From NCBI GenBank assembly GCA_965637545.1, contig OZ281500.1:8060001-8124000 (forward strand): 64,000 bases of DNA, in the 5' to 3' direction. Positions 6,001 through 64,000 of the stretch are shown here, piece after piece (within the stretch, counting starts at the first letter, position 1; each line of letters starts with the position of its first letter). The stretch is from Phallusia mammillata (lineage: Eukaryota). A program made the position numbers and the translations under genes. The notes under the pieces are model-generated. The model was not told the origin of the DNA. It saw only the letters and a list, made by a program, of their open reading frames with translations, and ran no database searches.

Positions 6001-9000
6001 CCAGATAAAGTGATTTAATTTCGCGACGAGCAAGCATGTGCCTGGTATAACGATCATGGGCCGATATCGATTATTAAGTCGCTCGATATTCCTACCACTG
6101 TATTGCGTTTTTCGCGCATTATTAAGCAATGACACGAAAACCTTAACACGGCGCATTTCAATTTCCGTGTGTCTGCTTGACACCAGACGACACACAACAC
6201 TCTGTCTCGTTCTTAAAAGCGAATAGAAGTAAAACGTTTTCATTGTTTACACAGCAATGTTACCTAAGCAAGACATATCAAGCTGGAGTCTTTGTACTCA
6301 GCCGTCTATGGGAAACAAAATTTGAGAATTTAGGGGCTGTGAGAGGCATTAGCCGGATTACTTTGGGTAAATGCCACAAATTGGACAAAATTACGTGGGT
6401 GACAGAGCATTTGCGGGTGTGCGATTGTATCTGCGTGTCCAAGGTGCGTCACGCCACTCGGAGAAGTTGGACTCAATCGGTAGTTTTCCGAGATAACACG
6501 GTCTATCAAATTAGTTAAGAGAGGTCGCACCTGTTTTTGCATGGTTAAATGATGCACGCGAATTACAGTTTGTTTTTCTTGTCTGATATACAAAATAAGT
6601 AAATATTTATAAACTTTTTCCTTTTTATTCTCTGTTTTTAAATCAAATGTAGCGACCTATGGTGGAAAGATGCGATTTTTGTCACATGGTACTTGTTTGA
6701 CAACCGTACACCATATTAAAAAGCAAAACTAAACAAATCAGATTAATGATTCGGATAACTTGTTAAACGCCCATTTCCAGGTGCGCTGTACCACCGGTGA
6801 TATTTTTCGCTAGATATTACGCGCAACCGGCACCAGGCTCTTTTACGTGTTTTACCGCTCATATTACACTTAATGCACGCCGAAAGCAAATTGCGCAACG
6901 GTTTTGTTTATTTATCTTGCGGCCTGCGACGCCCGTCGATTACGAACATCGTGTTTCTTGGCTGACCTACGAACGACTAATATGGTAACTGGCACTGAGA
7001 CTGGTAACATACGGCTCTGAATACCAGATGAATTCATGCGCTGGTTAAATCAATAGGTAAAATCCATATGGCGATGTGCGGGAGTGCCAGAACGCCTGTC
7101 AGCATTGTTTAAAGGTCGTCTGGAGAAACGATCGCATTCAAACGCGTTGCATTATTAATGGAAGACACCAGTCGTGGCAAACACTAACGTGCCCGTAACA
7201 AACATGTATATCCCGATTGTGCATGCGCTTCCATACGGTACCAACTTACAAAAAACGGCTGCTTACCTGACGAGTTGTGTGGAAACCTGTCTCTGTGATC
7301 ATTGCAAAGAACGAGCAGGCGGTAACAGAGCTGCAGATCATAACCTGGTTTTCCTGCAACTTCATTGACGACCTGGGAACAAACAAAAATCACTTGTCAC
7401 TCTCTTTCATTTCACTTAATTCGGGCAGTGCCTTGTACGAATTTACGAGTTGCTAAATGCGCATAACAGCTAACCAGACTGAGGCCTCCCCAGCGGAATA
7501 AACACAATCGCAAGTTTCATATATGTTTGCTCTGGGGAGATTACTATGAAGACACGGTATTGTAAAAAAGTAGTGTCAGACAAGGACACTTTTTCAATGC
7601 AAATCTGACATTGACCTTGGCCGCATTGTCATGTCTCATCGTTGGTGGTCTTGTGGAATGTGACATTCAATTATTGAAAGGTATAAGAAATTATATGTGA
7701 CTGCCTAAAATAAAACTACAAAAATATAACAGATTCATGATACATTTATGCAACGAAGTTTGTCCTGTTCTATAGATGATGGGTTATCCAACCAAACGAT
7801 AGGTTAAAGTTTTAAACAAAGCACAGCCGTTGATGAATGGAAGGAGATGGATTTCCGATTTCCACTTATTAAAAAACCATATGCGACTAGATGGACGTTG
7901 TTTGCGAAAAAAATTCTTATGCTAGTGTGAGATTTTGCACAAGGCTTTTCCTTTAGGCAAGAAGTAGTTGAAGCAAGCCGCAAAACGGAAACTTGAAATA
8001 TTTTGCGGAATTCTTGTCATATATTGTATTTACGCTTAGGTTTTGAAAGCAAATATTCCAAGAAAAACACTCTAAACCCAATTAATTCACATCAAATAAG
8101 CGTTAAACGCCACAGCACGTCTTCAACAGCTTGAAAAATCGAATCCAAACGCCTGAGTGCCAAGCAAACGACTTAACGAGCGGAAACACACTTATGAATT
8201 TCATCGATGAATCCCTAATTACCGTGGCGCAGGGAAATAAAAGCGAGTGACCTCGCGAAGGCAAGTCCATCTGGCCAGCGATCGATTAAAGCAAGTAGCC
8301 ACGCATCACGATGGGCTTGCGATCATCCTTCCAAACGCCCCTACTACCTCCATGCTGTTGAAATTAGCAGAAGTCAGTAACTGGTGACGAGCGGCGGCGC
8401 GGGCTGAAGCACAAAATCGATTTGGCAAATCTTAATTATTAATGACCAGTGCAAGGTTGAGGGCAAACGCCGTTGTTTTCGCGTGAAGCGACCTGTTGTT
8501 GCGACGAGAAAACGATTCACCAGCTCAATCGATCGGCGTTCGTAGCATTGTATTTCGTTTATATATTAACGGCTATGGCATTAAAATTACTGACTATGCC
8601 CGGGTGTTGTTTGAGAACATGGATAACACACGGTTTAAGTCCTCATAAAAATCAAACCTGCGTGAGCCCGGGAAGATATATTATTTAACGCAGATTTAAT
8701 TGTCAATTGCGGCGCCGAGATTTTGCAGAACGCCTCGTTAAAGACAAGTCCTCATTCGACACTAATGCACACTCGACTGACATATCGGGTTGAACGCGAT
8801 CGCGGTTAAACCGGAAAAGTGACCATTGTCTGGTACGGGTCAATTGAATCTCCTCATGCGTAAAAGCGTGGCCCGTCTTCTGTAAACTGACAATGAGCGG
8901 TTAGTTGGCAGTAGACCATGCCCGTCACCTTCCAATACAACTATGTACCAACAGCAGAGTTCATGTGGCAGCAGGTGCGCCATTTGCCAGGAAAATAAGT

Positions 9001-27689: not shown

Positions 27690-28355
27690 GGTGATAATTT
27701 CACATTACGATTTAGCCGATTATTAAGCAATATTTTGACAAATGAGGCGTATAATAACCTGAAACAACCCTTGTTATCCAGTCACATACACTAAATAAAC
27801 ATCTCGCAAGCTTTTGTAAATCAATATTCAGAATTATTTGGAGCGATGTGCACGGCAATAAATAACCTAAACAAACCAGGACAATGCGGAAAACGAGGAA
27901 ACAGGTAATACACATTATATTTCGTTGAAAAACATAAAAAGGAAATGATATTTTGTCAAAGTGCTTTGTCGGTCAGTTTTAAAACGTTTGTTTTTCAAAC
28001 AATCGAAGAACCATTTAACTGTGGTGCTTTACCGCCATCTATTGGAGTTTAAAAATACCGGCTTTGTCTTAAGCAGAAAAATGCTCAAAAGAGACTCTGA
28101 TAAAGTAAATGTAATTTTCTGCTTTCTTCCAATACAACACGTAAAAGTTAAAACTTAATACACAAACAGAAATATTTCAATATTTTTTAACATTTCTATA
28201 ACTTTGCTCTTTGTGAAAATAAGAAGGTAGTTCCCCCAATTTTGCCCGCTCGAAACAAAAATCTTTGGCAAAAGTTTAGTGGCCAGTCGCGAACTGTGTT
28301 CCTTTGGTGACAATTTCGACTTGCCTTTTTTCGGTAACAGATGTGATGGTTCACA
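27690..28355. promoter_or_regulatory. Probable promoter region of RAD51AP1, possibly bidirectional with the ZMIZ 5'-most exon
   Basis: It lies immediately upstream of the RAD51AP1 ATG. A strong minus-strand donor (CCAAT|GTAAGT) at ~27686 points into the ZMIZ locus. Confidence 0.35.
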
Positions 28356-31300
28356 ATGACTAGAAGACAATCTGCAAGGTGAGTGTGTGCCATTTTGTAG
28401 TTATGTTTGTTAATCTAGTTAACAAAACGGAATGAAATGACCGACATTAAAATGTTTACATATTTTCAGATCTCATAGTTCCATTAATTACGCTAAGATT
28501 GGAGTTGACGATAATGCAAGTGATGGTTAGTAAATCCTTTGTTTTTTTTTGCATTGTATCTTTTCACATGCAGTGTTTACATGCGTTTTACAGACGATTT
28601 TGCAGAAAGTACCCCTCCAAAGAAAAGAGTTAAGCTAAAAAAGGAGATAAAGGCCACAGCAAAATCAAAAAGGTAAAAAGTCGATGAAGTATAAAATGAT
28701 TCCCAAAAAATTATCATAATTTTAACAAACCTAATATCAATTCCCAAACTGCAAATTTATTGTGTGTGACTCTACAGTTCCAGATTGCCAGAAAAAGCAA
28801 AGAAAAAGTTTGAGGAGGAAATCCAAAAAGCTCTCGAGTTATCTTTATCTGCCTCTCAGGTAGAAAAACAAATCAGTTTTACTTTTCTCACCACTAATTA
28901 ACAGTGCAACATTTAATATGCACAGGATTAACTATTCGCTTGGTGCACATGGTGAAACATAGGACTATTGAGAGCATCTTTAACTTGTTGCTACTTTTAG
29001 ATAGCCTGATGTACCATTATATCGTTTTGTGCACCTTAACATCACTTGTACAGCTTTTAATCACTCAACATTGTCTGGTGCACATTCATATGGCTTTGTG
29101 CACCTTTTTTTTATCACTTCATGCAGTTTTTGTAACTTGGTGGACCCAAACTTTGCTTGATATGATGGTGCACCAAGTGATCCAAATGATTATGCATATA
29201 TATTTTAATAGATACTGATTTACATTGTAATTTGAGTGTCATTAAGCTTATGCTTGCTTGGATACATTTGGTAGTACAAGTGCTTTTGTCTAGGGTGAAA
29301 AGAGTGCTGTCCAAACATCTGACACAGAGTTGGAAAACAAAGTTGAATCAGATGTGTCAAATAGATCCGGTTTATCAGACATGAAGTGAGTTTTTATTTG
29401 CATCAATTTTATAACATAAATTATTATATATATGCATATCTTGGTTTATCAACAAAAAGTATTTTCCGCCATATAATTTGCTGTTGCAGGGGTGCAATAT
29501 GCAATGTTCAAGATGAAATTGAAGTAGTAAGTAAAGAGGATTCAAAGAAATCTAAACTGAATAAAAATGATGATGACTATCAGCTGTCTGATAGCATTGA
29601 ATCAGATAGTGATGAAAAAGAAGGTAAATAGCTAATGTAAGAAAATATTGTGTTGTGCATTTGTACTAGTGGTCTACAAACTATGTATATTATCCTGTGG
29701 CTTTTATTTTTTGTGAAGTATAACATTTGCAGCAAACTATGTGTGAATTGTAGAATATGTTTTAGATATGAGCCAATTTCCTCTGGGGTGTATGCCCAGT
29801 TGTGACATCGCACAGACTAGGCGAGGCATGGGTTTTTACTCTGTTACTCCCAACAAACTGTAGTGCCGTGGTATGGCTACACTAGCCAATATGGCCGATC
29901 TCTCGCCCCACTGTAGCTTATCATTTATTGGCTTAATGCTTTTACATTGACATTTTAGATTTCATGTCAGAAAGTGATGATGGAGCAGAAAGTGACAACA
30001 GCTTTTCCAAACCAAAAGCCAAATTGAAAAGGAAGACAATGCCGAAAAACAATAAACCAACTAAATCCACCCAGAAAAAAACTTCAGTGAAAATAGAAGC
30101 AAAAAAGCCAACTAAGGGTGTTCTTAAGGAACAAACAAATGCGAAACATAAATTACCTGGTATGTCTAACCTGTTGTGTTTTTTTTACATAAACTGTATG
30201 GGTAGCTTTACTGTGTGTAAAATTTTGAAAATATATTTGCACTACTACTGGCCAGACATGGGGCAATTCATATTCGAATGCATTCGAATACAGGTTTACC
30301 ACCTTCGTGCTGTATTCGAATGATTTTGGCTTTTATTCGATAGTGCATGAATACAATTCGAATTGTTGATGTTAATTTTTGAGTAACAATTCACGATACA
30401 AAAGCTTGAATAAATTCATTCGAGTACAATTCGAATTGTTGTAGGTCTTTGCCAACTTAAGAATTCGTAAAATCGAATACATGACTACATTTTTACGAAT
30501 ACAATTTGAATTGTTGTCTGTCTTTGGTAACATAACAATTCGTAAAATCGAATACATGACTACATTTTTACGAATACAATTCGAATTGTTGTCTGTCTTT
30601 GGTAACATAACAATTCGTAAAATCGAATACACGACTACATTTTACGAATACAATTCGAATTGTCAATTACCTCCAGACTAGGAGTAGTCGAGAATATGTT
30701 GCCACATATTTTTGCCAAATAGATTCAAATTGACAATGATCTGTGACCTGATTTGACAAGTTTTGTTTATGTTACGAAACAATGACACATAGAAGTTTGT
30801 TTGTGACGTTACATAAATGGAATTGTGTTACAAAGCTTGCAACATTGGTTTGTTCTCAGCACATAGCGTGTTTGTGAAGCGAAAATCTCATGTTAATTAC
30901 ATCAGTCAAGCTAATGTGGCAAAACAAAGCTCGTTGGTTTACATTTTCACCAATAAATTTGCAATTCATAAACCCATATGTTACATTTTGTTCAAATACC
31001 ATTTGAGTTTCGGGGCGCTTTTATTTCTTTTATTTTCCACAACTACAAATACCCGAATCGGTGCATTCGAATGCTATTCGAATTGTTGGCTTCTTACAAC
31101 GACTGAACAATTCGTGAACACAAATAACTAGAACTATTATTTCGAATACAATTCGAATTGCTACATCTAAAACAGGAAGGAAGTATTCATCAATACGAAT
31201 ACACACTTGGGGTTTATTCGAATAGTATTCGAATTACACAGCGCTGTTTTTTTGTCAAACATTCATGAATACAAATACTTGAAACGTTTTATTCGAATAC

Positions 31301-31933
31301 AATTCGAATTGCTGTCACCTTAGCATTACGAAACAATTCGTGAATACAAATGCTTTACTGGCATTATTCGAATACAATTCGAATTGCTGAAATTAAAAAA
31401 GAGTGTAAGTATTCATGAATACGAATACATGGTTTGTTTTTTTCGAATAGTATTCGAATTACATGTCGTTGTGGTTTGGTCAACAATTCATGAATACAAA
31501 TACTTGACTCGTTTTATTCGAATACTATTCGAATTGCTGTCACTCAAAAATTACCAAAGTATTCATGAATTCGAATATAGTCATGCAGGTATTCGTAAAG
31601 TATTCGAATACAGGACGCGTGTATTCGACCCCATGTCTGCTACTGGCATTTATTGAGGAACATGGTTCTTTATTTTAGCACGTCCAAGTGTGCCGTCAGT
31701 GAAGACTTACCATACATCACCAGTCAGTCCTCTTCCTCAAAGAAAATGGAACCCCCCAGGTTATTGTACATGCTAGTTCTTTATTTGCAAAAGTTCTCTT
31801 TATGATTGAAATAATGTATTGTGACAGATGTATTGTTGGTTTTGCAGGTCTTGCTGGCTGTTCGAGTGTACGTGATGTTTCTTCTACTAAATCACCGAGC
31901 ACACTACGAATTGGATTGTCACGAAATGTGTGA
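28356..31933 (+). CDS. RAD51AP1: RAD51-associated protein 1 homologue, ~275 aa to the first stop (TGA 31931-31933); the frame stays open to TAA 31970-31972
   Basis: Exons 28356-28378, 28470-28525, 28594-28672, 28784 (or 28778)-28859, 29294-29385, 29490-29623, 29959-30159, 31679-31759, 31848-31933, all phase-consistent. Motifs match RAD51AP1: INYAKIG...SDDDF (human VNYSQF...SDDDF), FEEEIQKALELS (YQRDLEVALALS), an acidic/Lys-rich middle, RKWNPPG (KWVPPA) and KSPSTLRIGLSR (KSPNQSLRLGLSR). Confidence 0.88.
30270..30665 (+). repeat. 75-bp minisatellite, left array
   Basis: Near-perfect units start at 30466, 30541 and 30616 (CGTAAAATCGAATAC...), with more degenerate units upstream. Each carries GAATACAATTCGAATTG or a close variant. 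Confidence 0.9.
31040..31615 (+). repeat. 75-bp minisatellite, right array
   Basis: The palindrome ATTCGAAT recurs at about 31151, 31226, 31301, 31376, 31452, 31527 and 31602 (period ~75), in the same orientation as the left array. Confidence 0.88.
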
Positions 31934-32391
31934 TTAAAACCACTCCACCCTGCAGCGTCTACTAAAACCTAACAATTTGAAAGCCATGTGTTTTTTTGCC
32001 ACCACCTCCATGGTGGCACCAATGTACAAACATGCGCCATGGCTTTGGTTTGCATTATCTTCTTGTGGATTTTCAATTTTACCTCATTCAGATCCAAATC
32101 TGCCTTTGTATTGGATGTTAAGAACGGATTATATTTTATCCGGTAAAACATTTAAACGTGCGATTCGATTGCACTTTGACGACGCTTGTCTTCGTATTTG
32201 TTTAATACAGAACATTTTAAACTTTTCATTTACGTCGTATTTTTATTTTGAGAGGAGCTAAACCCAAAATAAATAGCGTTTTATTCACTAACATAATCTT
32301 AGGTTATTCACGACCCAAGTGCGCCCACCTACCTGATTACAAAATATCCAGAGGTGGGCGCTGCTGCTCAGGTTTAAGATGGTCGTGTGGT

Positions 32392-32430
32392 TACGTGATT
32401 GTCAAAAAAAAAAAAAATACGTGATTGTCA
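32392..32430 (+). mobile_element. Poly(A)-only retro-insertion footprint with 13-bp TSD
   Basis: TACGTGATTGTCA (32392-32404), then A13 (32405-32417), then TACGTGATTGTCA (32418-32430). Confidence 0.6.
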
Positions 32431-33159
32431 GTGGTGATACCAATGGTGATATTCTGACTTAGACCTTACAGTTAAAGACGGTTTTGAAACTATTACGGGA
32501 CTGTAAGGGCTGCTCTCAAATACGCAATCTATATGCATTTTACTAAAAAATCACATAAAAATCATGACGGTTAGGGCCAGAACATCCCTACATCAATTCT
32601 ATTTCTGCAAGAACATCTCTATATTAAATCAAACACGTCTATAAAGGCGACCTGTACAGAGGACATCGAATAATCGGTACAAACATACAATTGCCAGAAG
32701 AACTCTATATAGTTAAACAAATATAAGTTATGTTACGTATTTTTTAACTTGAAAAATTATTTGTAAATAATTGTTTGTGCAACCTGATTTTTTAATTTGA
32801 AAGCACCCGAATCAAACATTCGCTTTCGACCAGGATTTATTGTCTAGTAATCATTTTACTATATTTTTGTCTACGATTTTATTTTCAAGTAGGTAAACAA
32901 GCCCTCAATCCCTTCCAGGTAAAACCGGTTTGCACCAGATACATTTGTGGCGCAATTGCAGTCGTATCTGGGTCAAGTGAGTTCGATCTTTAATCTACTG
33001 ACCTTTGCTTAGCTTTTGTTTGTAATTGAGTAACGACCGTGTTCTTTTGTGTCTTCCTTAAGTGGTAAAGGTGTTTACCGACTGTTAAATTAATGTGGAA
33101 CTATGGTAGAATTATATTTAGTAAAAATTTAGCACTTACGGAAAACGATTATTCTACAT

Positions 33160-37300: not shown

Positions 37301-40300
37301 CATTACATCGAGGGCGGTTTCAGACATTACATCAAGCGAATGATAGTTTAAAAAATGATTTTGACATTAGTTTTGGCATAAGAGCGGTTTTAATTCATGC
37401 ACACAGTCTTAAATGTGATATAACATGCACCCTTCATTTAATGTCGTTCGATACTTTTTTAAACATTACCAATGTTTCTACCATGCAGTTGTTGAAATTT
37501 ACTTCATTCTAGCATGCAACGGCAAATTATGGCCAATCCCCCATGTTGAATTAACAATCTATTACTATTTCTGGCATTCTGTTAGGGTGTTTTTTTAGGA
37601 TGTTTTACTAATTAAGTGATATTCAGTTGTTATATTTCATAGAAACAGTCATCGCCACACATTCACGTACTCAGTACAGTTTTCAGACACACAAGAAAAA
37701 CAAACAAAAAAGAATAGAAAATAAAATACAATAATAAAAACACGGGGATTGTCACCTGCAATACAGAATAAAAGAACGTTATGAAAACTACCTCTGCTGC
37801 CTTGAAATTCCCAAAGCAAGCATGCCATTCAACATGCCGACGTGGCATTTTCATAGCAAAAGTTTCAATGGTTGCCTCTAACAGTGCTCCAAAGTCAAAA
37901 ATACATTGGTTTGCATTTGTATATATTCCTTTTAGGAACTTGAAATTTTGGGATTTATTTATAGCACCAACGATTTGTGATGTGCTGTAGTAATTAGGGG
38001 AACACAAGGTCAACAATATTGCAATTACACACAACAAATGTGCGACAGGCAAGTGAAAGTTTTGCTATGTGGGTATTTCGTGTATGCAACAACGGCATTA
38101 AAAATTTTTCAAAACTTAAGATAATTTACAGCAAACTATTTAATTTATTTATATCCTAAGTAGCTCCAACATACCTGCACTGCCTTCTGTGAGGAAGAAA
38201 AGTTAGAACTAACAGTGGCCAAACGTAGTTGAAACAAATTTGACAGTCATTGTTCGAAATCTTTGAATTTGATTGATGCAAACGTACGTGTTATGCTTTA
38301 AAGTGAACTACATTCGTAAGAAAAAATACAGCTTTAGTCTTTCTACTACATTTAACATAGTTTCGGCCACTGTTGTCGTTTGGTTTACAATTTAAACAAG
38401 ACTTTACCTGGCTGTCCAAACCAAGATTCAAAAGCATGAAGAAAAAAAGAAATGCCCAGATGGGGGCGAAGGGAAGATTGGCCACAGCAGCAGGATAAGC
38501 GACGAACGCGAGCCCGGCACCTGAAGATCACAAAACACATACAAGGTAAAAATATTTTGTGAATCAAGGGAAGGCAACCTTTTTGTACTGCGGACCGTTA
38601 TTGAAACTAAAATTTTATCGCGGACCGGCGTTTAAAAAACTACAAATATTCAGTAAATGATTGATTAAGAAGCAAATGCTTCTGACCCAAAATCAGTAGA
38701 CACTGGGTAGGTATATTCGAGATATATATTTCATAAGTTTTTGGAGACTGACGATGCCTGAATAGGTGAAATATATATCTAGAATACACCAACCCAATGT
38801 CTACTGATTTTGGGTCAGAAGCATTTGCTTCTTAATCAATCATTTACTGAAAGAGTTTTGATTCAGTGATCGTGGATATTAACATGCCTACTATTAGAGA
38901 GACAGATCCTGTGAATAGCATTTATGTTTACAAATATTCAGCAATGAAAACGATTAAATAGTTTATCATCCCCGGGCTACATGGGTAAAATGTTTTGAAG
39001 CATTTAACCTGTAAAAGTATACGGCCCGTTAACGAACTCCTCGCGGACCGGTTGCCGACCACTGGTCTAGATAAATGTTGGATTGAATAGCTTTTCGAAT
39101 AGACGATGATCGTAAAAAATATATAAGCCACTGTGTCTTCCGATGTTTGACAAACAAACAGAGAATTCGTTGTAGTGATTTTACTACCGGCGCAAAAGTA
39201 AATTGGCCAGACAGTCAAGATACAGCGAGCCGCACGGACCGGCAGCATTGTCCGGTTTAAAGCGGATCTTCCCGAGCTAAACCGGTCTGAACAAAGGTTA
39301 ATTTTGAGTGGTTAAAAAAATCTAAGGGTTGTAAATATTGCAGACCCACCCTGATCTACAACGTCGGCTACATCTCTGCCTGTCTGATGGGCTAAAGCAC
39401 CGAGTACCGAGAAAACGACGAAACCTGCAAGGATGCTTGTCCCACAGTTGATGGCACAAATTGAAAGAGCATCCCTGAAATTGCAGAAATGCCGACGTGA
39501 CAACGAAAAACGATTATACCAAACGGTGTATCGACAAAGGCTTTACTCTTGCTCTATTGAAAATACACTCGTAAAAACTTCTAATAATTGAAATTGGTCA
39601 AATTGTAGTCCTGTAATGTATGTAAACCTCTCGGTGGTAATTATGTGATGTTACTGTTACTTGTTACTGTTAAGCTGCTGCAAGCCTTTATTACACTTTT
39701 TCATACCTGTACACATTATTGTTGAACTTGTTCAGCGAAGAATATGACAACAAAACTCCCCAGGCCGCCCCGAGCGAGTAGAAAATCTGAACGGCCGCGT
39801 CCGACCAAACCTGTGTACGCATTTAACTAAATAATTAATCTAAAATTTTATACAAGATCACTAAAATATGCCAATTTTTGGGATGCAGATTTACATTTAT
39901 TCAAAGTTGGCAAATTTGTACTCTATGCTATCCAGTATCAAAACGTGTATAAGTTGTAGAGACCAAACAACTTTTTTTTCAACTTGAATACCTATACACC
40001 CATTTTTGGTATAAAACGGCAATCAGTTGGCGATTCACAACATAAAGATGTCATATGCGATGTGAGAACCACGTTTGTGTTTGTAGCATACTTGTGTCGT
40101 GATAGATTTGCATGGGAGCAGAACGTTGAAAAATGTTCAAGTTTGTGAAATTAATACTGTTACTGGTTGCATTGGTCGGATTAGGCGACTGTAAACTGTA
40201 GGTAAGTAGATTCTTGGAGTTTTTTTGCTTGTAGATGTGAGATGGTTAAGTCTCTACGATTTACATGATTGGGTACAGAGTGCAAATAAGTGGTTAGTTT

Positions 40301-47418: not shown

Positions 47419-58882
<11,464 letters not shown>

Positions 58883-59003
58883 TTAACGAACTAAAGCAAA
58901 CAGGTTTGTTTAGAACAATATTTACGTAAATGGTAAACATACACTTTTTCACGATCAGTTGTCACCTTAATAGAAAGCAACATTTAATTTAAACTCAAAC
59001 TCC

Positions 59004-59019
59004 ATTCTGGAAATTTCTG
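59004..59019. promoter_or_regulatory. Heat-shock element (three inverted nGAAn units) upstream of HSPA4
   Basis: TTC-TG-GAA-AT-TTC at 59005-59017, ~170 bp upstream of the HSPA4 ATG. This is the canonical HSF-binding pattern. Confidence 0.8.
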
Positions 59020-59687
59020 GTACATGCTCTTTCTTCACTGGACTATGTTCATTTGCGCTACAGCGATTTCACAGTTTTCAGGCATGATATCCTATCCCTC
59101 ATCCGAAAGAAAATACGAGAAGATGAAAAAAATTATTTTTCGGCCTGTATTTTTTTCTTTTCTGTAAATTAGAGTAAGAAAACGGCTTAACAATATAAAG
59201 TCTTGCTGTTCCGTAGCTACCTCCGACTTTTAAACCAGTTGTAAAATAGTACCCAAAACTATATGTACAAGCTGATGAAACACTTTTTATTCATATTGCG
59301 GTATTGTAGCACCACCATGTATATTGGAAAAATACATGGTAACCTGAGAATAAACTCAATACACAAAATGTAAATGCTGACCTTCTGTTTTTATTTCAAC
59401 ATAGTAACAAATCATTTTCTTTATTTCTTAAACGAACAATGTGTCTTAATCGTGTTCAGAAAGAAACAAGTTCAAATAATCAGCAAAGTATAACAGCTTG
59501 CACAAGCAAACATGTAATTTCACTTTTTCAGTATTAAATAAACTTCATAGAACTTGTAATGTTCTCTTGTGCGTTGCAGTGGCCCTTGGCCCGAAACTAG
59601 GACAACTCCTGCTTTCCAGTTCAGTTGCAAGTGTGGTCCTCCAGATGATAAATTTCACCCAGGTTGCATGTAAGTTTTTAGGGTAGT

Positions 59688-62125
59688 TCAGGAATTTTTG
59701 TTGTACTCCTCTGCACTATATGGATTTCCATTTTGTATGTAAGAACTGCCCAATCCATATAAATGGCCAGAATGTTTGGATATATCACTGTCATTGTCGA
59801 AGAACTTCTACACAACAAACAATTTATTAAAAAATCGAGCAGTGGTTTTCGAACTGTGGGTTACAACTTGTAACCCCCTTAGAAGGGTATGGGGGTGTTT
59901 GCCTTTTTTCTGGAGGGTGCAAGGGCTTGTGATAAACAATAAAAAAGTACTTATCCCAAAAAAGTCACTAGTAACCTTGTAATTTACCACATGTTTATAT
60001 TTCAGTATTTTCATCCTGCCCTTTAATAAACCACATAAAAATCACCAAGCTTCGTGTCAACCTGTTTTGGGTCCTATTATGATGAAAATAAATGCTTTGT
60101 TATGTGACTTAGAAGATAATTGATCCAAGAACTTGCCACTGTGCGGAATGGCACGGAAACAATAAAACAGACAGAAAAATTAGATGATAAAAGTTTGCTT
60201 ATTAAGTGTGTATGTGTGATAATGCAGGTTAGGCAGTTGTGAATAAAAAGTTGAAAGAATTAGTGAACTTTTTCTGTCTACAGTCAAACTGTAATCTACA
60301 AGGTGTTAAAAAAGGATGGAATTTTTTGGAAGGGGATCGTCAGTTGCATTTGGTTGTTAAAATGGGCCAGTTGAAAAAGGTTGAAACCACTGATTAAGAG
60401 TCATACTTCTTTTAGTTTGAAGAAGGTTAATCCAGTCAGAAGGCTATCACTGCCAGCCTGATGTTGTGATCCAACTCTTTTTACTTCCAACTGTTCAGCC
60501 ACCTCTTGCAGACCTCCCTAAAAAGTAGTGTTATTTCAATTTTGTATTTACTGTGCTTCTTGTTAAATTCCTAAGGCACATTCAAATTAATTTCCTCTTA
60601 AAACAATGACAAATGTAAGAAAGACACAAAAAAATGTACCTTTAGTGCTTTGCAGCTTCTCATCAGATACTTGACATCAAATATAGTAGGAAAGAAAAGC
60701 TTGAGTAACTCAAAAAATGTTGATTCATCAGTTGCCAGGTTGTTATTTGTAAGCAGTTTTAGCAAATACCCAAAATCATATCCACTGCAACATAACAACT
60801 GATGATGTAATTAAATAAAAAGAAACTAATGGCAAAGATAAAAATTAAATATACATGCTTTTGTTGGCAATACACATCAACAATATGACTGCAGTAAAAT
60901 GTACATAAAAGTTTAAGTAATTCACCTTTCCAAACCTTTGCATGATTTAAAAACAAACCTGTGAAACGAAACCCAGTGAACATTATCCATTAAAACAACT
61001 CCAGATGTCATTAACAGCTCAGCAAAATACAAGGGTTCTATTCCTTCCGCTTCATGCTTTTTAAACTGAATCCCAGATTCCTGAAGCAACTCAATTGAAT
61101 CTTGAGCATACATGTCTTCACTGCAAGAAAATAAAAAGTAAATGTTGTATATATATACTTGAAGTCAGTGGTTCTCTTTTTTGGGTGGGATTTGACTTTT
61201 TGGGTGCTCCACAGTACAATTATATTTTGGGTGGAATTGGAAATAGGCTAGTTGCATAGAATTTATTGCTTGATTGGCCATTTGTTATGATCTGTTATCT
61301 CTCCTTAAAATTAAATTATGTATTTAAATAATATATTTTAAGCCAACATGCTGGTTGCGGATGCTTTTTTTTCTTATTTGACAATGGACTGGTCCATGAT
61401 ATTTATTTCATTGGATTAGTGGTCCACGGCCTGAAATTAGTTGAGAACCACTGCTTTATGTGGTCCCTTTCGACAAACAGTCACCAACGGCCATATGTTA
61501 AAAGTGTTTAGGAACATTAAAAATATACAGCATTTAAAGAAAAGAAATTGTTAAAGTGTAAACGAGATTTGCATGTTTAGGTGCAGCTTTTTCACACAAG
61601 TTGTTTTATCCATAAAAAATCTTTTACTTCAAGTTAAATTTAAAGTTGAACTGCCAAGTTGATACACCAGTGGGGGTTTCACCACTTTCATTCATAAAAG
61701 TGAGGCCCAGTTGTATGATCTTTAGCATGTCAACATTGCATCGCAAAAGCTGGTACTGATAGTCTGAATTAGTCCGGAACTCTCCAATTGGCCGAGCCAC
61801 AACTCCAGGAAACTCCGTATCCTGCAACACAAACATAAAAACTTGACATTAAACAAACATAAACAGTATGTTTAGCTTGTTTTGCAAAACCATGTCAGGT
61901 ATTAGTTCCTTTACATTTTTCACCTGTAGACAAATCAAACTGATTTAATGAATGTTTTACTAAAGTTGAATATTCTTTGAGACTGAGAGGGAAAACCTAG
62001 CTTCTAGTACCCACCATAGCAATGTAGTTATATTGCTTGACAATTTTTCTAATTTTCTTGAATTCTGCCTCTATGTTAGTTGACCATACTTCTGTTATTG
62101 GATCATCTGTTTGTTGAGCAGGCAT
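59688..62125 (-). CDS. CNOT7: CCR4-NOT deadenylase subunit CAF1 (CNOT7/CNOT8), DEDD nuclease, 280 aa
   Basis: Exons 62125-62015, 61821-61628, 61120-60959, 60784-60640, 60517-60407, 59807-59688. Contains [28 protein letters not shown] and [11 protein letters not shown], so the catalytic residues are intact. The C-terminus [14 protein letters not shown] resembles CNOT7 more than CNOT8. Confidence 0.96.
59840..60392. mobile_element. Old hAT-Charlie-like MITE filling most of CNOT7 intron 5
   Basis: Ends CAGTGGTTTTCGAACT and AGGTTGAAACCACTG. The TSD is decayed. Confidence 0.65.
61166..61453. mobile_element. hAT-Charlie-like MITE in CNOT7 intron 2
   Basis: Ends CAGTGGTTCTC and GAGAACCACTG, with flanks CTTGAAGT / CTTTATGT (6/8 TSD). 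Confidence 0.75.
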
Positions 62126-63195
62126 TATGTTTTGATAGAAAACACAAGCACAAAAATGCCTAAAAATGAATCTACAGTCGCAACAATCTGTAGTAAAACA
62201 TAGATAACATGCACTTAAAAATAAAATTTTATAAGGATTTTCCATGACATAGAAAGTGGAAAACTATGACTAATTTTGGTCAAACTAAGGTTAATTTCAG
62301 ACACTTTTTTCGAAATGACACAAACATGCACTGCAATGCAAATGTGCACCTGGCGATAATCCGATAAAAAGGTGCATTTAGCGAAGTTAAAGTGTACCAA
62401 GACTTGGTCCAAGTAATGTTAAGGTCCACCAAGCGATTGAAAGTGATATTAATATGCACCATGCGATCCTGTATATTTGATATGCGCCGGTTTTCTATAT
62501 AAGAAATCATGAAAAAGTCTGACTTCATAATTGCTTATTGTTGACAAAAATGGGTAATTTTACTACAAATCGCCACAACAATGGATTTAGCCACATATAG
62601 ACTTCCTTACGTGCATGTTGTTTTACTATGAGGAAGGAAGGAATATTGAAACTGTTCGTTAACATCCGCAATTTAGGTTAAACACAAACCATTGTTTAAA
62701 GAACCCAAATGACTATGTCGACAATAACTAAACAGCCTGTTTAACTCTGACACGTAAATTCAAATGTGCTGGGTGAACTACACGTATTACATTTTCACAG
62801 GCGATGTGGAAATAACTCCAACTTTAACTGAGACTTGAACCTCAAAATGTTAATTTCCTGGCGCGCCGAAAATCAAAACTGCCGGAACAAAACATTACAG
62901 GGCAAAACATTTACCTGATATTGTAAGGGACAATTACAAAACACAATGGACGGTATTTTTCTGGCTTACAAGTATTGGACAAATTTGTGCCCCAATTCGT
63001 TTTTAATAGAGTTTGCCCTTTTACCAACAAATTATAATTACTTTGAATAAGATTTGCTCCTAATATCGAAAAGTTGACTAGAGTAAAGTTCAAAGCGTTT
63101 AAGGAGAAATAAAATCGAGAAACAATTATGTATGGTACCTAACAATGAATCTGATAAATTTGGTTTTCCAAAGATGCAAGCCCTTTTTCCTCCAA

Positions 63196-64000
63196 ATGCT
63201 TTGGTCACGCCTGACTGAGGTCTTCCGGTTGCGTGGTCTGTATGTTTTTTTTTTAAAGAAAATAACTACAAAACACCTGCGGGCTTGAAAGCCACAAGAA
63301 ACATACAGGGACGTCGATAATTTCATTGTGCCAAAATTGCTCACATATGAAGCCCAAAAGAATGAGGAAAAGTAATTATTTTATTTTCCTGTAATTACCA
63401 TAGTAATAGTGCTGTCAACATACTGGTTAATTGGTCAATTAATTATTGATAATCTAAACATAAAGAAGTTTTAATAACTACATTAGACCCGAGAAATAAG
63501 CCTGATATTCTGCAAATGTACATTGAATATTTATTCCATGAAAGCATCTTCCAATGCGTTTGATACGGATGATTGACTACAGCCTATATTTTACAAAACC
63601 AATTGATAAAACTGACTGGAACATTGGAATCTTGTGTTTTGAGCAACAGAAACGTATTGGTCATAAAGGCAGCTCGTATGTTCATTATTACATGCCTGCA
63701 GGCATATTCTTATTATTGTTAATTAAAACAGACAGGTAGCATACTATCTTAGCTTTTATATTTATCAGTTAAACTGTTTGTGTATGTGTGTTCTGTTGTG
63801 TATGTGATTTCTGCTTGGTTATTGAAGAGGATAATAAAGATTTAAACCATCTTTTTCATCCCCTAAAAAGTAGTTTACTTTAAAACGATTCTTTCAATAA
63901 AATTTTTGCCAGTTAAGGCTAAAAAGATAAATAACCCTTTTTCTTGAAAATCTCTTTTTATCTCATCTATATTCTACACAGATGCACACCAGCACCCTCA
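63196..64000 (+). CDS. Candidate 5' end of a gene divergent from CNOT7
   Basis: caaATG at 63196 encodes MLWSRLTEVFRLRG (Arg-rich, transit-peptide-like) and ends at a GTATGT donor after 63239. There is an in-phase open segment at ~63582-63735 and an acceptor ctacacag near 63981. No homology recognised. Confidence 0.25.

What the first reader, a model, noticed from the sequence alone, without database searches (positions are those of the whole stretch)
31910..31972. In-frame TGA in the middle of RAD51AP1's conserved RAD51-binding motif, with KPLHP still encoded after it
Seen: the last exon reads CTA CGA ATT GGA TTG TCA CGA AAT GTG TGA TTA AAA CCA CTC CAC CCT GCA GCG TCT ACT AAA ACC TAA = LRIGLSRNV*LKPLHPAASTKT*. 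Known: human RAD51AP1 ends LRLGLSRLARVKPLHPNATST, the C-terminal RAD51-interaction motif shared with RAD51AP2. The alignment is gap-free, the TGA (31931-31933) sits exactly on the Arg, and the 12 residues after it still match. Inference: either a recent CGA>TGA nonsense allele from methyl-CpG deamination (this gene body is CpG-poor), a base-call error, or programmed recoding (stop readthrough, or A-to-I editing UGA>UGG) acting as a switch for RAD51 binding.
Basis: partly seen in the sequence, partly recalled or inferred. Interest (0 to 1): 0.78.

Follow-up and report, generated by a model that had tools for sequence, protein, structure and literature searches.

The report
Segregating nonsense allele in RAD51AP1
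The stop codon inside the RAD51-binding tail of this animal's RAD51AP1 gene is a real, transcribed C-to-T nonsense variant at a CpG; other individuals of the species still carry the arginine codon, so it is an ordinary polymorphism and not programmed recoding.

Summary
Window 31904-31972 reads LRIGLSRNV*LKPLHPAASTKT*, with TGA at 31931-31933. It is the last exon of a 9-exon RAD51AP1 orthologue. Pfam RAD51_interact scores 39.8 bits with X at the stop against 21.5 bits before it, and the X aligns with the Arg of human LSRLARVKPLHP.

Laying public runs on the gene decided the case. Two DNA runs from two studies read C at 31931 (CGA, Arg). Two spliced RNA contigs from two other studies read T, as the assembly does. 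The T-bearing mRNA is fully spliced. The stop lies 83 nt past the last exon junction, so the exon-junction rule predicts no decay.

This is a C/T polymorphism at a CpG, in a coding sequence with CpG o/e 0.46. The downstream codons are intact because the change is young. I found no SECIS, no structure after the stop, no leaky context (UGA-U) and no second gene copy.

The T allele gives 277 aa instead of 290. It keeps Site-N and Site-M and loses Site-C (KPLHP), the recruitment anchor, so I predict a dose-sensitive hypomorph.

Orthologues could not be fetched. Allele frequency and the reference animal's zygosity are unknown. Interest is low.

The parts
28326..28378 (+). Exon 1 as far as the RNA contig reaches: 5' UTR with an in-frame upstream stop, and the start codon ATG at 28356-28358
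   Evidence: Spliced RNA contigs X12 and X14; reconstruction and GT-AG check
28470..28525 (+). Exon 2
   Evidence: Joint 28376>28468 (cut +2), GT..AG, in X12 and X14
28594..28672 (+). Exon 3 (DDDF...PPKKR, lysine-rich N-terminal part)
28778..28859 (+). Exon 4
29294..29385 (+). Exon 5
29490..29623 (+). Exon 6 (acidic, Ser-rich)
29959..30159 (+). Exon 7 (acidic stretch, then lysine-rich stretch)
30160..31678 (+). Intron 7 (1519 nt), filled with high-copy 75/150/225-nt tandem repeats
   Evidence: Joint; contig depths in the thousands in DNA runs (table 2); TRF arrays
31679..31759 (+). Exon 8. It encodes KWNPP at 31744-31758, the counterpart of human Site-N (K303, W304, P306, P307)
   Evidence: Site-N residues are from PMC12704761. 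The equivalence is read from the sequence; no tool aligned it (one search gave only a spurious hit)
31848..32225 (+). Exon 9, the last exon: end of the coding sequence plus the 3' UTR. The RNA contigs end at 32221 and 32225, 12-16 nt after an AATACA at 32204-32209 (a possible poly(A) signal, inferred)
31904..31924 (+). LRIGLSR, the counterpart of human Site-M (332-LRLGLSR-338). It is kept in both alleles
   Evidence: PMC12704761
31931..31933 (+). TGA in the assembly. The variable base is 31931: T in the window and in RNA runs X12 and X14, C (CGA, Arg) in DNA runs X3 and X4. It aligns with the Arg between Site-M and Site-C of human RAD51AP1
   Evidence: table 3, row 31931
31937..31951 (+). KPLHP, the counterpart of human Site-C (L345, H346). 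It is translated only from the C allele
   Evidence: PMC12704761 and PMC1636435
31970..31972 (+). TAA, the stop codon of the C (Arg) allele, which gives a 290-aa protein

Best explanation
Window 28326-32225 (+) holds a single-copy, expressed, 9-exon orthologue of RAD51AP1. Base 31931 is a C/T polymorphism within the species. C gives CGA (Arg) and a 290-aa protein that ends in the full RAD51-interaction motif. T, the allele in this assembly, gives TGA and a 277-aa protein that ends ...LRIGLSRNV. T is the derived state: a C>T transition at a CpG in a CpG-depleted coding sequence, the signature of methyl-cytosine deamination (inferred). The 12 codons after the stop still look coding because the change is young, not because they are translated. 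The stop is in the last exon, 83 nt past the final exon junction, so the exon-junction rule predicts no nonsense-mediated decay, and the T mRNA is indeed found fully spliced. The truncation falls between Site-M and Site-C. By analogy with the human protein, the product should keep Site-N and Site-M, the essential remodelling site, and lack Site-C, the surface anchor that recruits the protein to RAD51 filaments. I predict a dose-sensitive hypomorph for RAD51 binding rather than a null. Shown here: the polymorphism, the splicing, the homology and the single copy. Inferred: the deamination origin, escape from decay and the hypomorphic effect.
For: table 3: at 31931 the window has T. X3 (study P2) reads C at depth 23.2 of 23.2, 180 nt from the contig end. 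X4 (study P3) reads C at 9.06 of 9.06, 109 nt from the end. X12 (P6) and X14 (P5) show no difference. Their contigs of 1161 and 1152 nt cover exons 1-9 with 0 other letters and 8 GT..AG joints, so they are RNA-derived.

The C-bearing contigs also differ from the window at other exonic places: 28800 in X4; 30073, 30074 and 32013 in X3. They are therefore other haplotypes of the same locus, about 0.5-0.7% diverged.

the last two exons have one place only in the 240-Mb assembly; the match to RAD51_interact and to human RAD51AP1 runs through the stop, and the stop sits on Arg; a second gene on the same contig with the motif reads RIGLSRKHRVSPLHP, with Arg at the same place, so Arg is ancestral.

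the C allele makes a CpG; CpG o/e is 0.46 in the CDS and 0.97 in the window; in the human protein H329A/H346A and L328A (Site-C) lower RAD51 binding. The Site-C mutant binds about 2.5-fold more weakly and is rescued by higher protein concentration, whereas Site-M mutants lose all function. Rad51ap1 knockout mice have no annotated reproductive phenotype, so loss of function is tolerable in at least one animal.

(indirect): X1, the probable source run, holds 0.98 of the sampled words of 31848-32290. That leaves no room for a change at 31931.
Against: All four runs are Logan contigs, which are consensus sequences that drop minor variants. With one contig per run at the site, zygosity and allele frequency cannot be read. 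Run identities are coded, so X3 and X4 could come from a diverged population in which C is fixed, and the RNA runs could come from the same culture line as the assembly; the number of independent T carriers is therefore uncertain. No orthologues from related species could be fetched. There are no protein-level data. The hypomorph prediction is carried over from human biochemistry.
Confidence: 0.85

Rival explanations
1. The truncation is fixed in one lineage rather than segregating. T is fixed in the population or line that gave the assembly and the RNA runs, and C is fixed in the population sampled by X3 and X4. The gene is then permanently shortened in one lineage.
For:: the RNA contigs of two studies are identical to the window over about 1,150 nt. 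Both C carriers also differ at other sites (12-14 differences per 2 kb), so the T and C carriers fall into two haplotype groups.
Against: Divergence of 0.5-0.7% is ordinary within-species variation. All runs carry one species label. With five samples, fixed and segregating cannot be told apart. The mechanism (nonsense variant, no recoding) is the same as in the best explanation.
Confidence: 0.08
2. Programmed recoding. The UGA is read through, decoded as selenocysteine, or edited to UGG, so that a share of the protein regains KPLHP and RAD51 binding is tunable.
For: The 12 codons after the TGA are intact and add about 18 bits to the Pfam score. The T mRNA is stable and spliced. Basal readthrough of UGA is never zero (general knowledge).
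Against: The codon is CGA in two other individuals, so the intact downstream codons need no translation to explain them. No SECIS or any Rfam family was found at E<=10 in 31600-33000, nor at gathering score in the whole window. The 100 nt after the stop fold no better than shuffles (z 0.15). The base after the stop is U, not the leaky UGA-CUAG context (general knowledge). The RNA contigs read A at 31933, although contigs would hide minor editing.
Confidence: 0.04
3. Artefact. The T is an assembly or polishing error, or reflects C-to-U RNA editing that entered the assembly through RNA-guided polishing, and the genomic base is C everywhere.
For: In one search the two DNA-like runs read C and the two RNA runs read T. 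On its face this is the pattern expected of C-to-U editing.
Against: The window is a DNA assembly and reads T. X1, the probable source DNA run, holds 0.98 of the sampled words across the exon. The DNA runs also differ from the RNA runs at exonic places by changes that are not C>U (28800 A>G, 30073 A>C, 30074 G>A, 32013 G>A), which indicates haplotype differences rather than editing.
Confidence: 0.03

Closest known systems
Human RAD51AP1 (PIR51); PDB 9qn8 and 9qnc; Pfam PF15696 RAD51_interact
   Same: A lysine- and acid-rich, probably disordered protein of about 290 aa. Its C-terminus holds, in order, a WxPP motif, LRxGLSR and KPLHP. The Pfam score is above the cut-off, and the alignment to the human C-terminal peptide has no gap in the motif.
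   Different: The assembly's allele stops at the Arg between LRxGLSR and KPLHP. The rest of the protein is too diverged to align with these tools. The organism has a 240-Mb genome with CpG o/e near 1, so it is probably an invertebrate (inferred).
Engineered human Site-C mutants (H329A/H346A, L328A, deletion of L328-H329) in Kovalenko 2006 (PMC1636435) and PMC12704761
   Same: The T allele removes exactly these residues and leaves Site-M and Site-N. It is a natural counterpart of the Site-C mutant.
   Different: It is a truncation of 13 residues, not a point change. It occurs naturally and has not been tested biochemically.
Ordinary CpG-transition nonsense polymorphisms (CGA>TGA) in last exons that escape nonsense-mediated decay
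   Same: A C>T change at a CpG, an Arg codon turned into TGA, a position in the last exon, a stable spliced mRNA, and both alleles present in the species.
   Different: None found.
Programmed stop-codon readthrough genes of animals (UGA-CUAG type) and selenoprotein genes
   Same: An in-frame UGA followed by conserved coding sequence.
   Different: The stop is not conserved even within the species. There is no leaky context, no downstream structure and no SECIS.

Membership tests
RAD51AP1 / Pfam PF15696 RAD51_interact | C-terminal RAD51-interacting motif scoring above Pfam's gathering cut-off (25 bits) | tested here: met
   39.8 bits with X at the stop and 38.4 bits in the six-frame scan. The part before the stop alone gives 21.5 bits, below the cut-off.
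RAD51AP1 / Pfam PF15696 RAD51_interact | Site-M, LRxGLSR | tested here: met
   LRIGLSR at 31904-31924 aligns to human LRLGLSR. The site is defined in PMC12704761.
RAD51AP1 / Pfam PF15696 RAD51_interact | Site-C, KPLHP (Leu and His needed for RAD51 binding), inside the reading frame | tested here: not met
   In the assembly's T allele KPLHP (31937-31951) lies after the TGA. In the C allele of runs X3 and X4 it is in frame.
RAD51AP1 / Pfam PF15696 RAD51_interact | Site-N, the KWxPP motif (DMC1 and RAD51 site) upstream of Site-M | tested here: inconclusive
   KWNPP is read at 31744-31758 and fits residues K303, W304, P306 and P307 named in PMC12704761. No tool aligned it (one search gave only a spurious hit).
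RAD51AP1 / Pfam PF15696 RAD51_interact | Physical binding to RAD51 and stimulation of D-loop formation | not testable with these tools
   This needs purified proteins of this species.
Programmed stop-codon readthrough | The stop codon is conserved among individuals and related species, with constraint on the extension | tested here: not met
   The codon is CGA in X3 and X4 and TGA in the window, X12 and X14.
Programmed stop-codon readthrough | A leaky context (UGA-CUAG or UGA-C) or a stimulatory RNA structure just downstream | tested here: not met
   The context is UGA-UUA-AAA. The fold of 31925-32030 has z 0.15, and its only hairpin lies after the TAA.
Selenoprotein gene | A SECIS element in the 3' UTR | tested here: not met
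   No SECIS match at E<=10 in 31600-33000. No Rfam family at gathering score in the window.
A-to-I recoding site (UGA>UGG) | G at 31933 in RNA but A in DNA, with a double-stranded structure around the site | tested here: inconclusive
   RNA contigs X12 and X14 read A, and no structure forms around the site. Contigs drop minor variants, so low-level editing is not excluded.

The most novel reading that the evidence does not exclude
The T allele is common or fixed in the reference lineage and is not simply broken. Low-level readthrough of the UGA (or editing to UGG) would give a minor full-length form with Site-C beside a major Site-C-less form, so that recruitment of RAD51AP1 to RAD51 filaments is set by termination efficiency.
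Probability: 0.03. Interest if true: 0.6.

Novelty: new member of a known kind. Interest (0 to 1): 0.2.

Why it matters
The main value is as a caution. The reference assembly carries a truncating allele of a homologous-recombination accessory factor. Gene models built on it will report a RAD51AP1 without its RAD51 anchor, and comparative studies could mistake that for a lineage-specific loss.

The RNA runs that share the T haplotype may come from a widely cultured line. If so, animals of that line may have weakened RAD51AP1 recruitment, which could affect work on DNA repair, meiosis or homology-directed genome editing in this species.

The allele is also a natural Site-C deletion that leaves Site-M and Site-N in place. 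Comparing C/C and T/T animals could test in vivo the 'recruitment anchor' model proposed from human biochemistry.

Tried and rejected
Base-call error: rejected, because spliced RNA contigs of two studies carry T.

Second copy or alternate haplotig in the assembly: none.

Selenocysteine: no SECIS.

Readthrough-stimulating structure: none (z 0.15).

C-to-U editing: rejected, because the DNA assembly has T and the linked differences are of other kinds.

Word search of the protein database with the 43-aa open frame of the last exon (window 31802-31930), meant to count T- and C-type frames in other assemblies: no candidate. ORFs this short may simply not be in the collection, so this blank says nothing.

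PDB search with exon 8, to align Site-N: only a spurious repeat-protein hit.

Earlier findings by words: nothing.

Left out: a search with the full-length spliced protein (277 or 290 aa). It has no reference and is too long to type, and single exons fall outside the length band of the word search. For this reason orthologues from related species were not compared.

Read laying allowed one call only, so the other runs (P4, P7, P10) could not be genotyped. Their word shares (0.86 for the P7 runs, as for X14; 0.70-0.72 for the P10 runs) hint at T and at other haplotypes respectively, but this is weak.

Full report
**Observation.** Window 31904-31972 (+) reads CTA CGA ATT GGA TTG TCA CGA AAT GTG TGA TTA AAA CCA CTC CAC CCT ... 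TAA. This translates to LRIGLSRNV*LKPLHPAASTKT*, with the TGA at 31931-31933. The window has no N. With X at the stop, the exon matches Pfam PF15696 (RAD51_interact) at 39.8 bits (E 5e-10, cut-off 25). The part before the stop alone gives 21.5 bits, so the twelve codons after the TGA are homologous coding sequence and not chance. phmmer against PDB sequences aligns the exon to human RAD51AP1 (9qnc_B and 9qn8_B). The motif aligns without a gap, and the X lies on the Arg of LSRLARVKPLHP.

**Gene structure.** Two RNA-like public runs (X12 of study P6, X14 of study P5) each hold one contig of about 1,150 nt. Each contig lies on the window in nine pieces joined by eight GT..AG joints, with 0 other letters. 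With the cuts set to GT-AG, the exons are:

- 28326-28378
- 28470-28525
- 28594-28672
- 28778-28859
- 29294-29385
- 29490-29623
- 29959-30159
- 31679-31759
- 31848-32225

The ATG is at 28356, after an in-frame upstream stop. The frame gives 277 aa up to the TGA, or 290 aa up to the TAA at 31970-31972. The protein is rich in lysine and acidic residues. Near its end it carries, in order, KWNPP, LRIGLSR and, after the TGA, KPLHP. The contigs skip introns, so they are RNA-derived: the gene is expressed and the TGA-bearing mRNA is correctly spliced. The stop lies 83 nt after the last exon junction, so the exon-junction rule predicts no nonsense-mediated decay (established knowledge applied here, not tested).

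**The decisive result.** Table 3 has a row for place 31931. The window reads T.

| Run | Type | Study | Base at 31931 | Depth | Distance from contig end |
|---|---|---|---|---|---|
| X3 | DNA | P2 | C | 23.2 of 23.2 | 180 nt |
| X4 | DNA | P3 | C | 9.06 of 9.06 | 109 nt |
| X12 | RNA | P6 | T | no difference reported | not applicable |
| X14 | RNA | P5 | T | no difference reported | not applicable |

The C-bearing contigs match the window otherwise, with 1-2 differences in 427-498 nt around the exon. The locus is single-copy in the 240-Mb assembly, so they are alleles and not paralogues. They also differ from the window at other exonic places: 28800 in X4; 30073, 30074 and 32013 in X3. These differences include changes that are not C>T. 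The contrast between the RNA and DNA runs is therefore a haplotype difference and not RNA editing. X1, the probable source run, holds 0.98 of the sampled words of 31848-32290, which leaves no room for a mismatch at 31931; this is indirect. The conclusion is that 31931 is a C/T polymorphism: CGA (Arg) in some individuals, TGA in the assembly's haplotype.

**Direction and origin.** Arg is the ancestral state, for three reasons:

- The human protein has Arg at this place.
- A second gene on the same contig with the motif (G000 C7:7372904-7372984, 31.4 bits) reads RIGLSRKHRVSPLHP, with Arg at the same place.
- The C allele restores a full motif.

In the C allele the C is followed by G, so the change is a CpG transition. 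CpG o/e is 0.46 in the coding sequence, 0.84 in the whole gene and 0.97 in the window. This fits exon or gene-body methylation in a genome that is not depleted overall. Methyl-cytosine deamination is the likely cause (inferred).

**Recoding tests.**

- Rfam gives no SECIS or anything else credible at E<=10 in 31600-33000, and no family at gathering score in the whole window.
- The 106 nt from 31925 fold no better than shuffles (z 0.15). The only hairpin lies beyond the TAA.
- The base after the stop is U, not the known leaky context.
- The RNA contigs read A at 31933, though contigs would hide minor editing.

Nothing requires recoding, because the intact downstream codons are explained by the youth of the allele.

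**Likely effect.** In human RAD51AP1, the mutations R316A, L319Q, L328A and H329A lower RAD51 binding (PMC1636435). The 2025 cryoEM study (PMC12704761) defines three sites:

- **Site-N:** K300, K303, W304, P306 and P307.
- **Site-M:** 332-LRLGLSR-338. It inserts into a pocket at the protomer interface and is essential for all activities.
- **Site-C:** L345 and H346. It is a surface 'recruitment anchor'. Its mutation weakens binding about 2.5-fold, and the defects are rescued by more protein.

The TGA here falls exactly between Site-M and Site-C. The 277-aa product should keep Site-N and Site-M and lose only the anchor. I therefore predict a dose-sensitive hypomorph and not a null (inference from the human data). 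Rad51ap1 knockout mice have no annotated reproductive phenotype (PMC8754306), and this genome has a second protein with the motif. A weakened allele could thus persist.

**Limits.**

- All laid runs are contigs, so zygosity, allele frequency and minor RNA variants cannot be read.
- Run identities are coded. The T carriers may share one culture line with the assembly, and the C carriers may come from another population.
- Orthologues from related species were not compared. The spliced protein has no reference and is too long to type, and the word search with the 43-aa open frame found nothing.

**Verdict.** The explanation is the plainest of the three offered: a young CGA>TGA nonsense allele, transcribed and probably immune to decay, that happens to sit in the reference haplotype. 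It is an ordinary kind of variant in a well-known gene family. Its practical value is as a warning for annotation and as a natural Site-C deletion for testing the anchor model.

Noticed in passing
G000 C7:7372904-7372984 (L003:1501-1581; L007:8405-8485), about 720 kb upstream of the window on the same contig: A second RAD51_interact motif (31.4 bits, above the cut-off) ends an open frame ...RRIGLSRKHRVSPLHPRYTPYK* that follows a splice-acceptor-like site. Long Ser/Thr/Asp-rich open frames of 325 and 221 aa lie 0.6-2.6 kb upstream on the same strand (L007:5820-6797, 7181-7846). The layout recalls RAD51AP2, which was described as vertebrate-specific, yet this genome looks invertebrate (240 Mb, CpG o/e near 1).
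   Followed up: partly
window 30160-31678 (intron 7 of the gene): The intron is filled with tandem arrays of 75, 150 and 225 nt: 30421-30663 (3.3 copies, 93% matches) and 31136-31609. They share a TTCGAATACAATTCGAATT core. Contig depths in the DNA runs reach the thousands here, against about 8-23 in the flanks, so this is a high-copy repeat family of the genome.
   Followed up: partly
window 38741-38784: An earlier first-stage note (s1-399183) calls this a hammerhead ribozyme antisense in an SLC6 intron. The Rfam scan of the whole window at gathering score found no family at all, hammerhead included. I did not look at it at a looser threshold.
   Followed up: partly
window 1-24000 against 24001-64000: Base composition steps down from about 0.44-0.47 GC to 0.33-0.40 near 24 kb. 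CpG o/e falls from about 1.0-1.2 in the first 24 kb to 0.44 in 56001-64000. This suggests a mosaic of methylated and unmethylated domains.
   Followed up: no
L007:1786-3970 (-), G000 C7:7366285-7368469: Open frames on the minus strand hold the FYFSFENS...DYFTEKFW signature, which I recall from alpha-1,3-fucosyltransferases (GT10). They appear to be a neighbour of the RAD51AP2-like gene. This was not scanned against Pfam.
   Followed up: no
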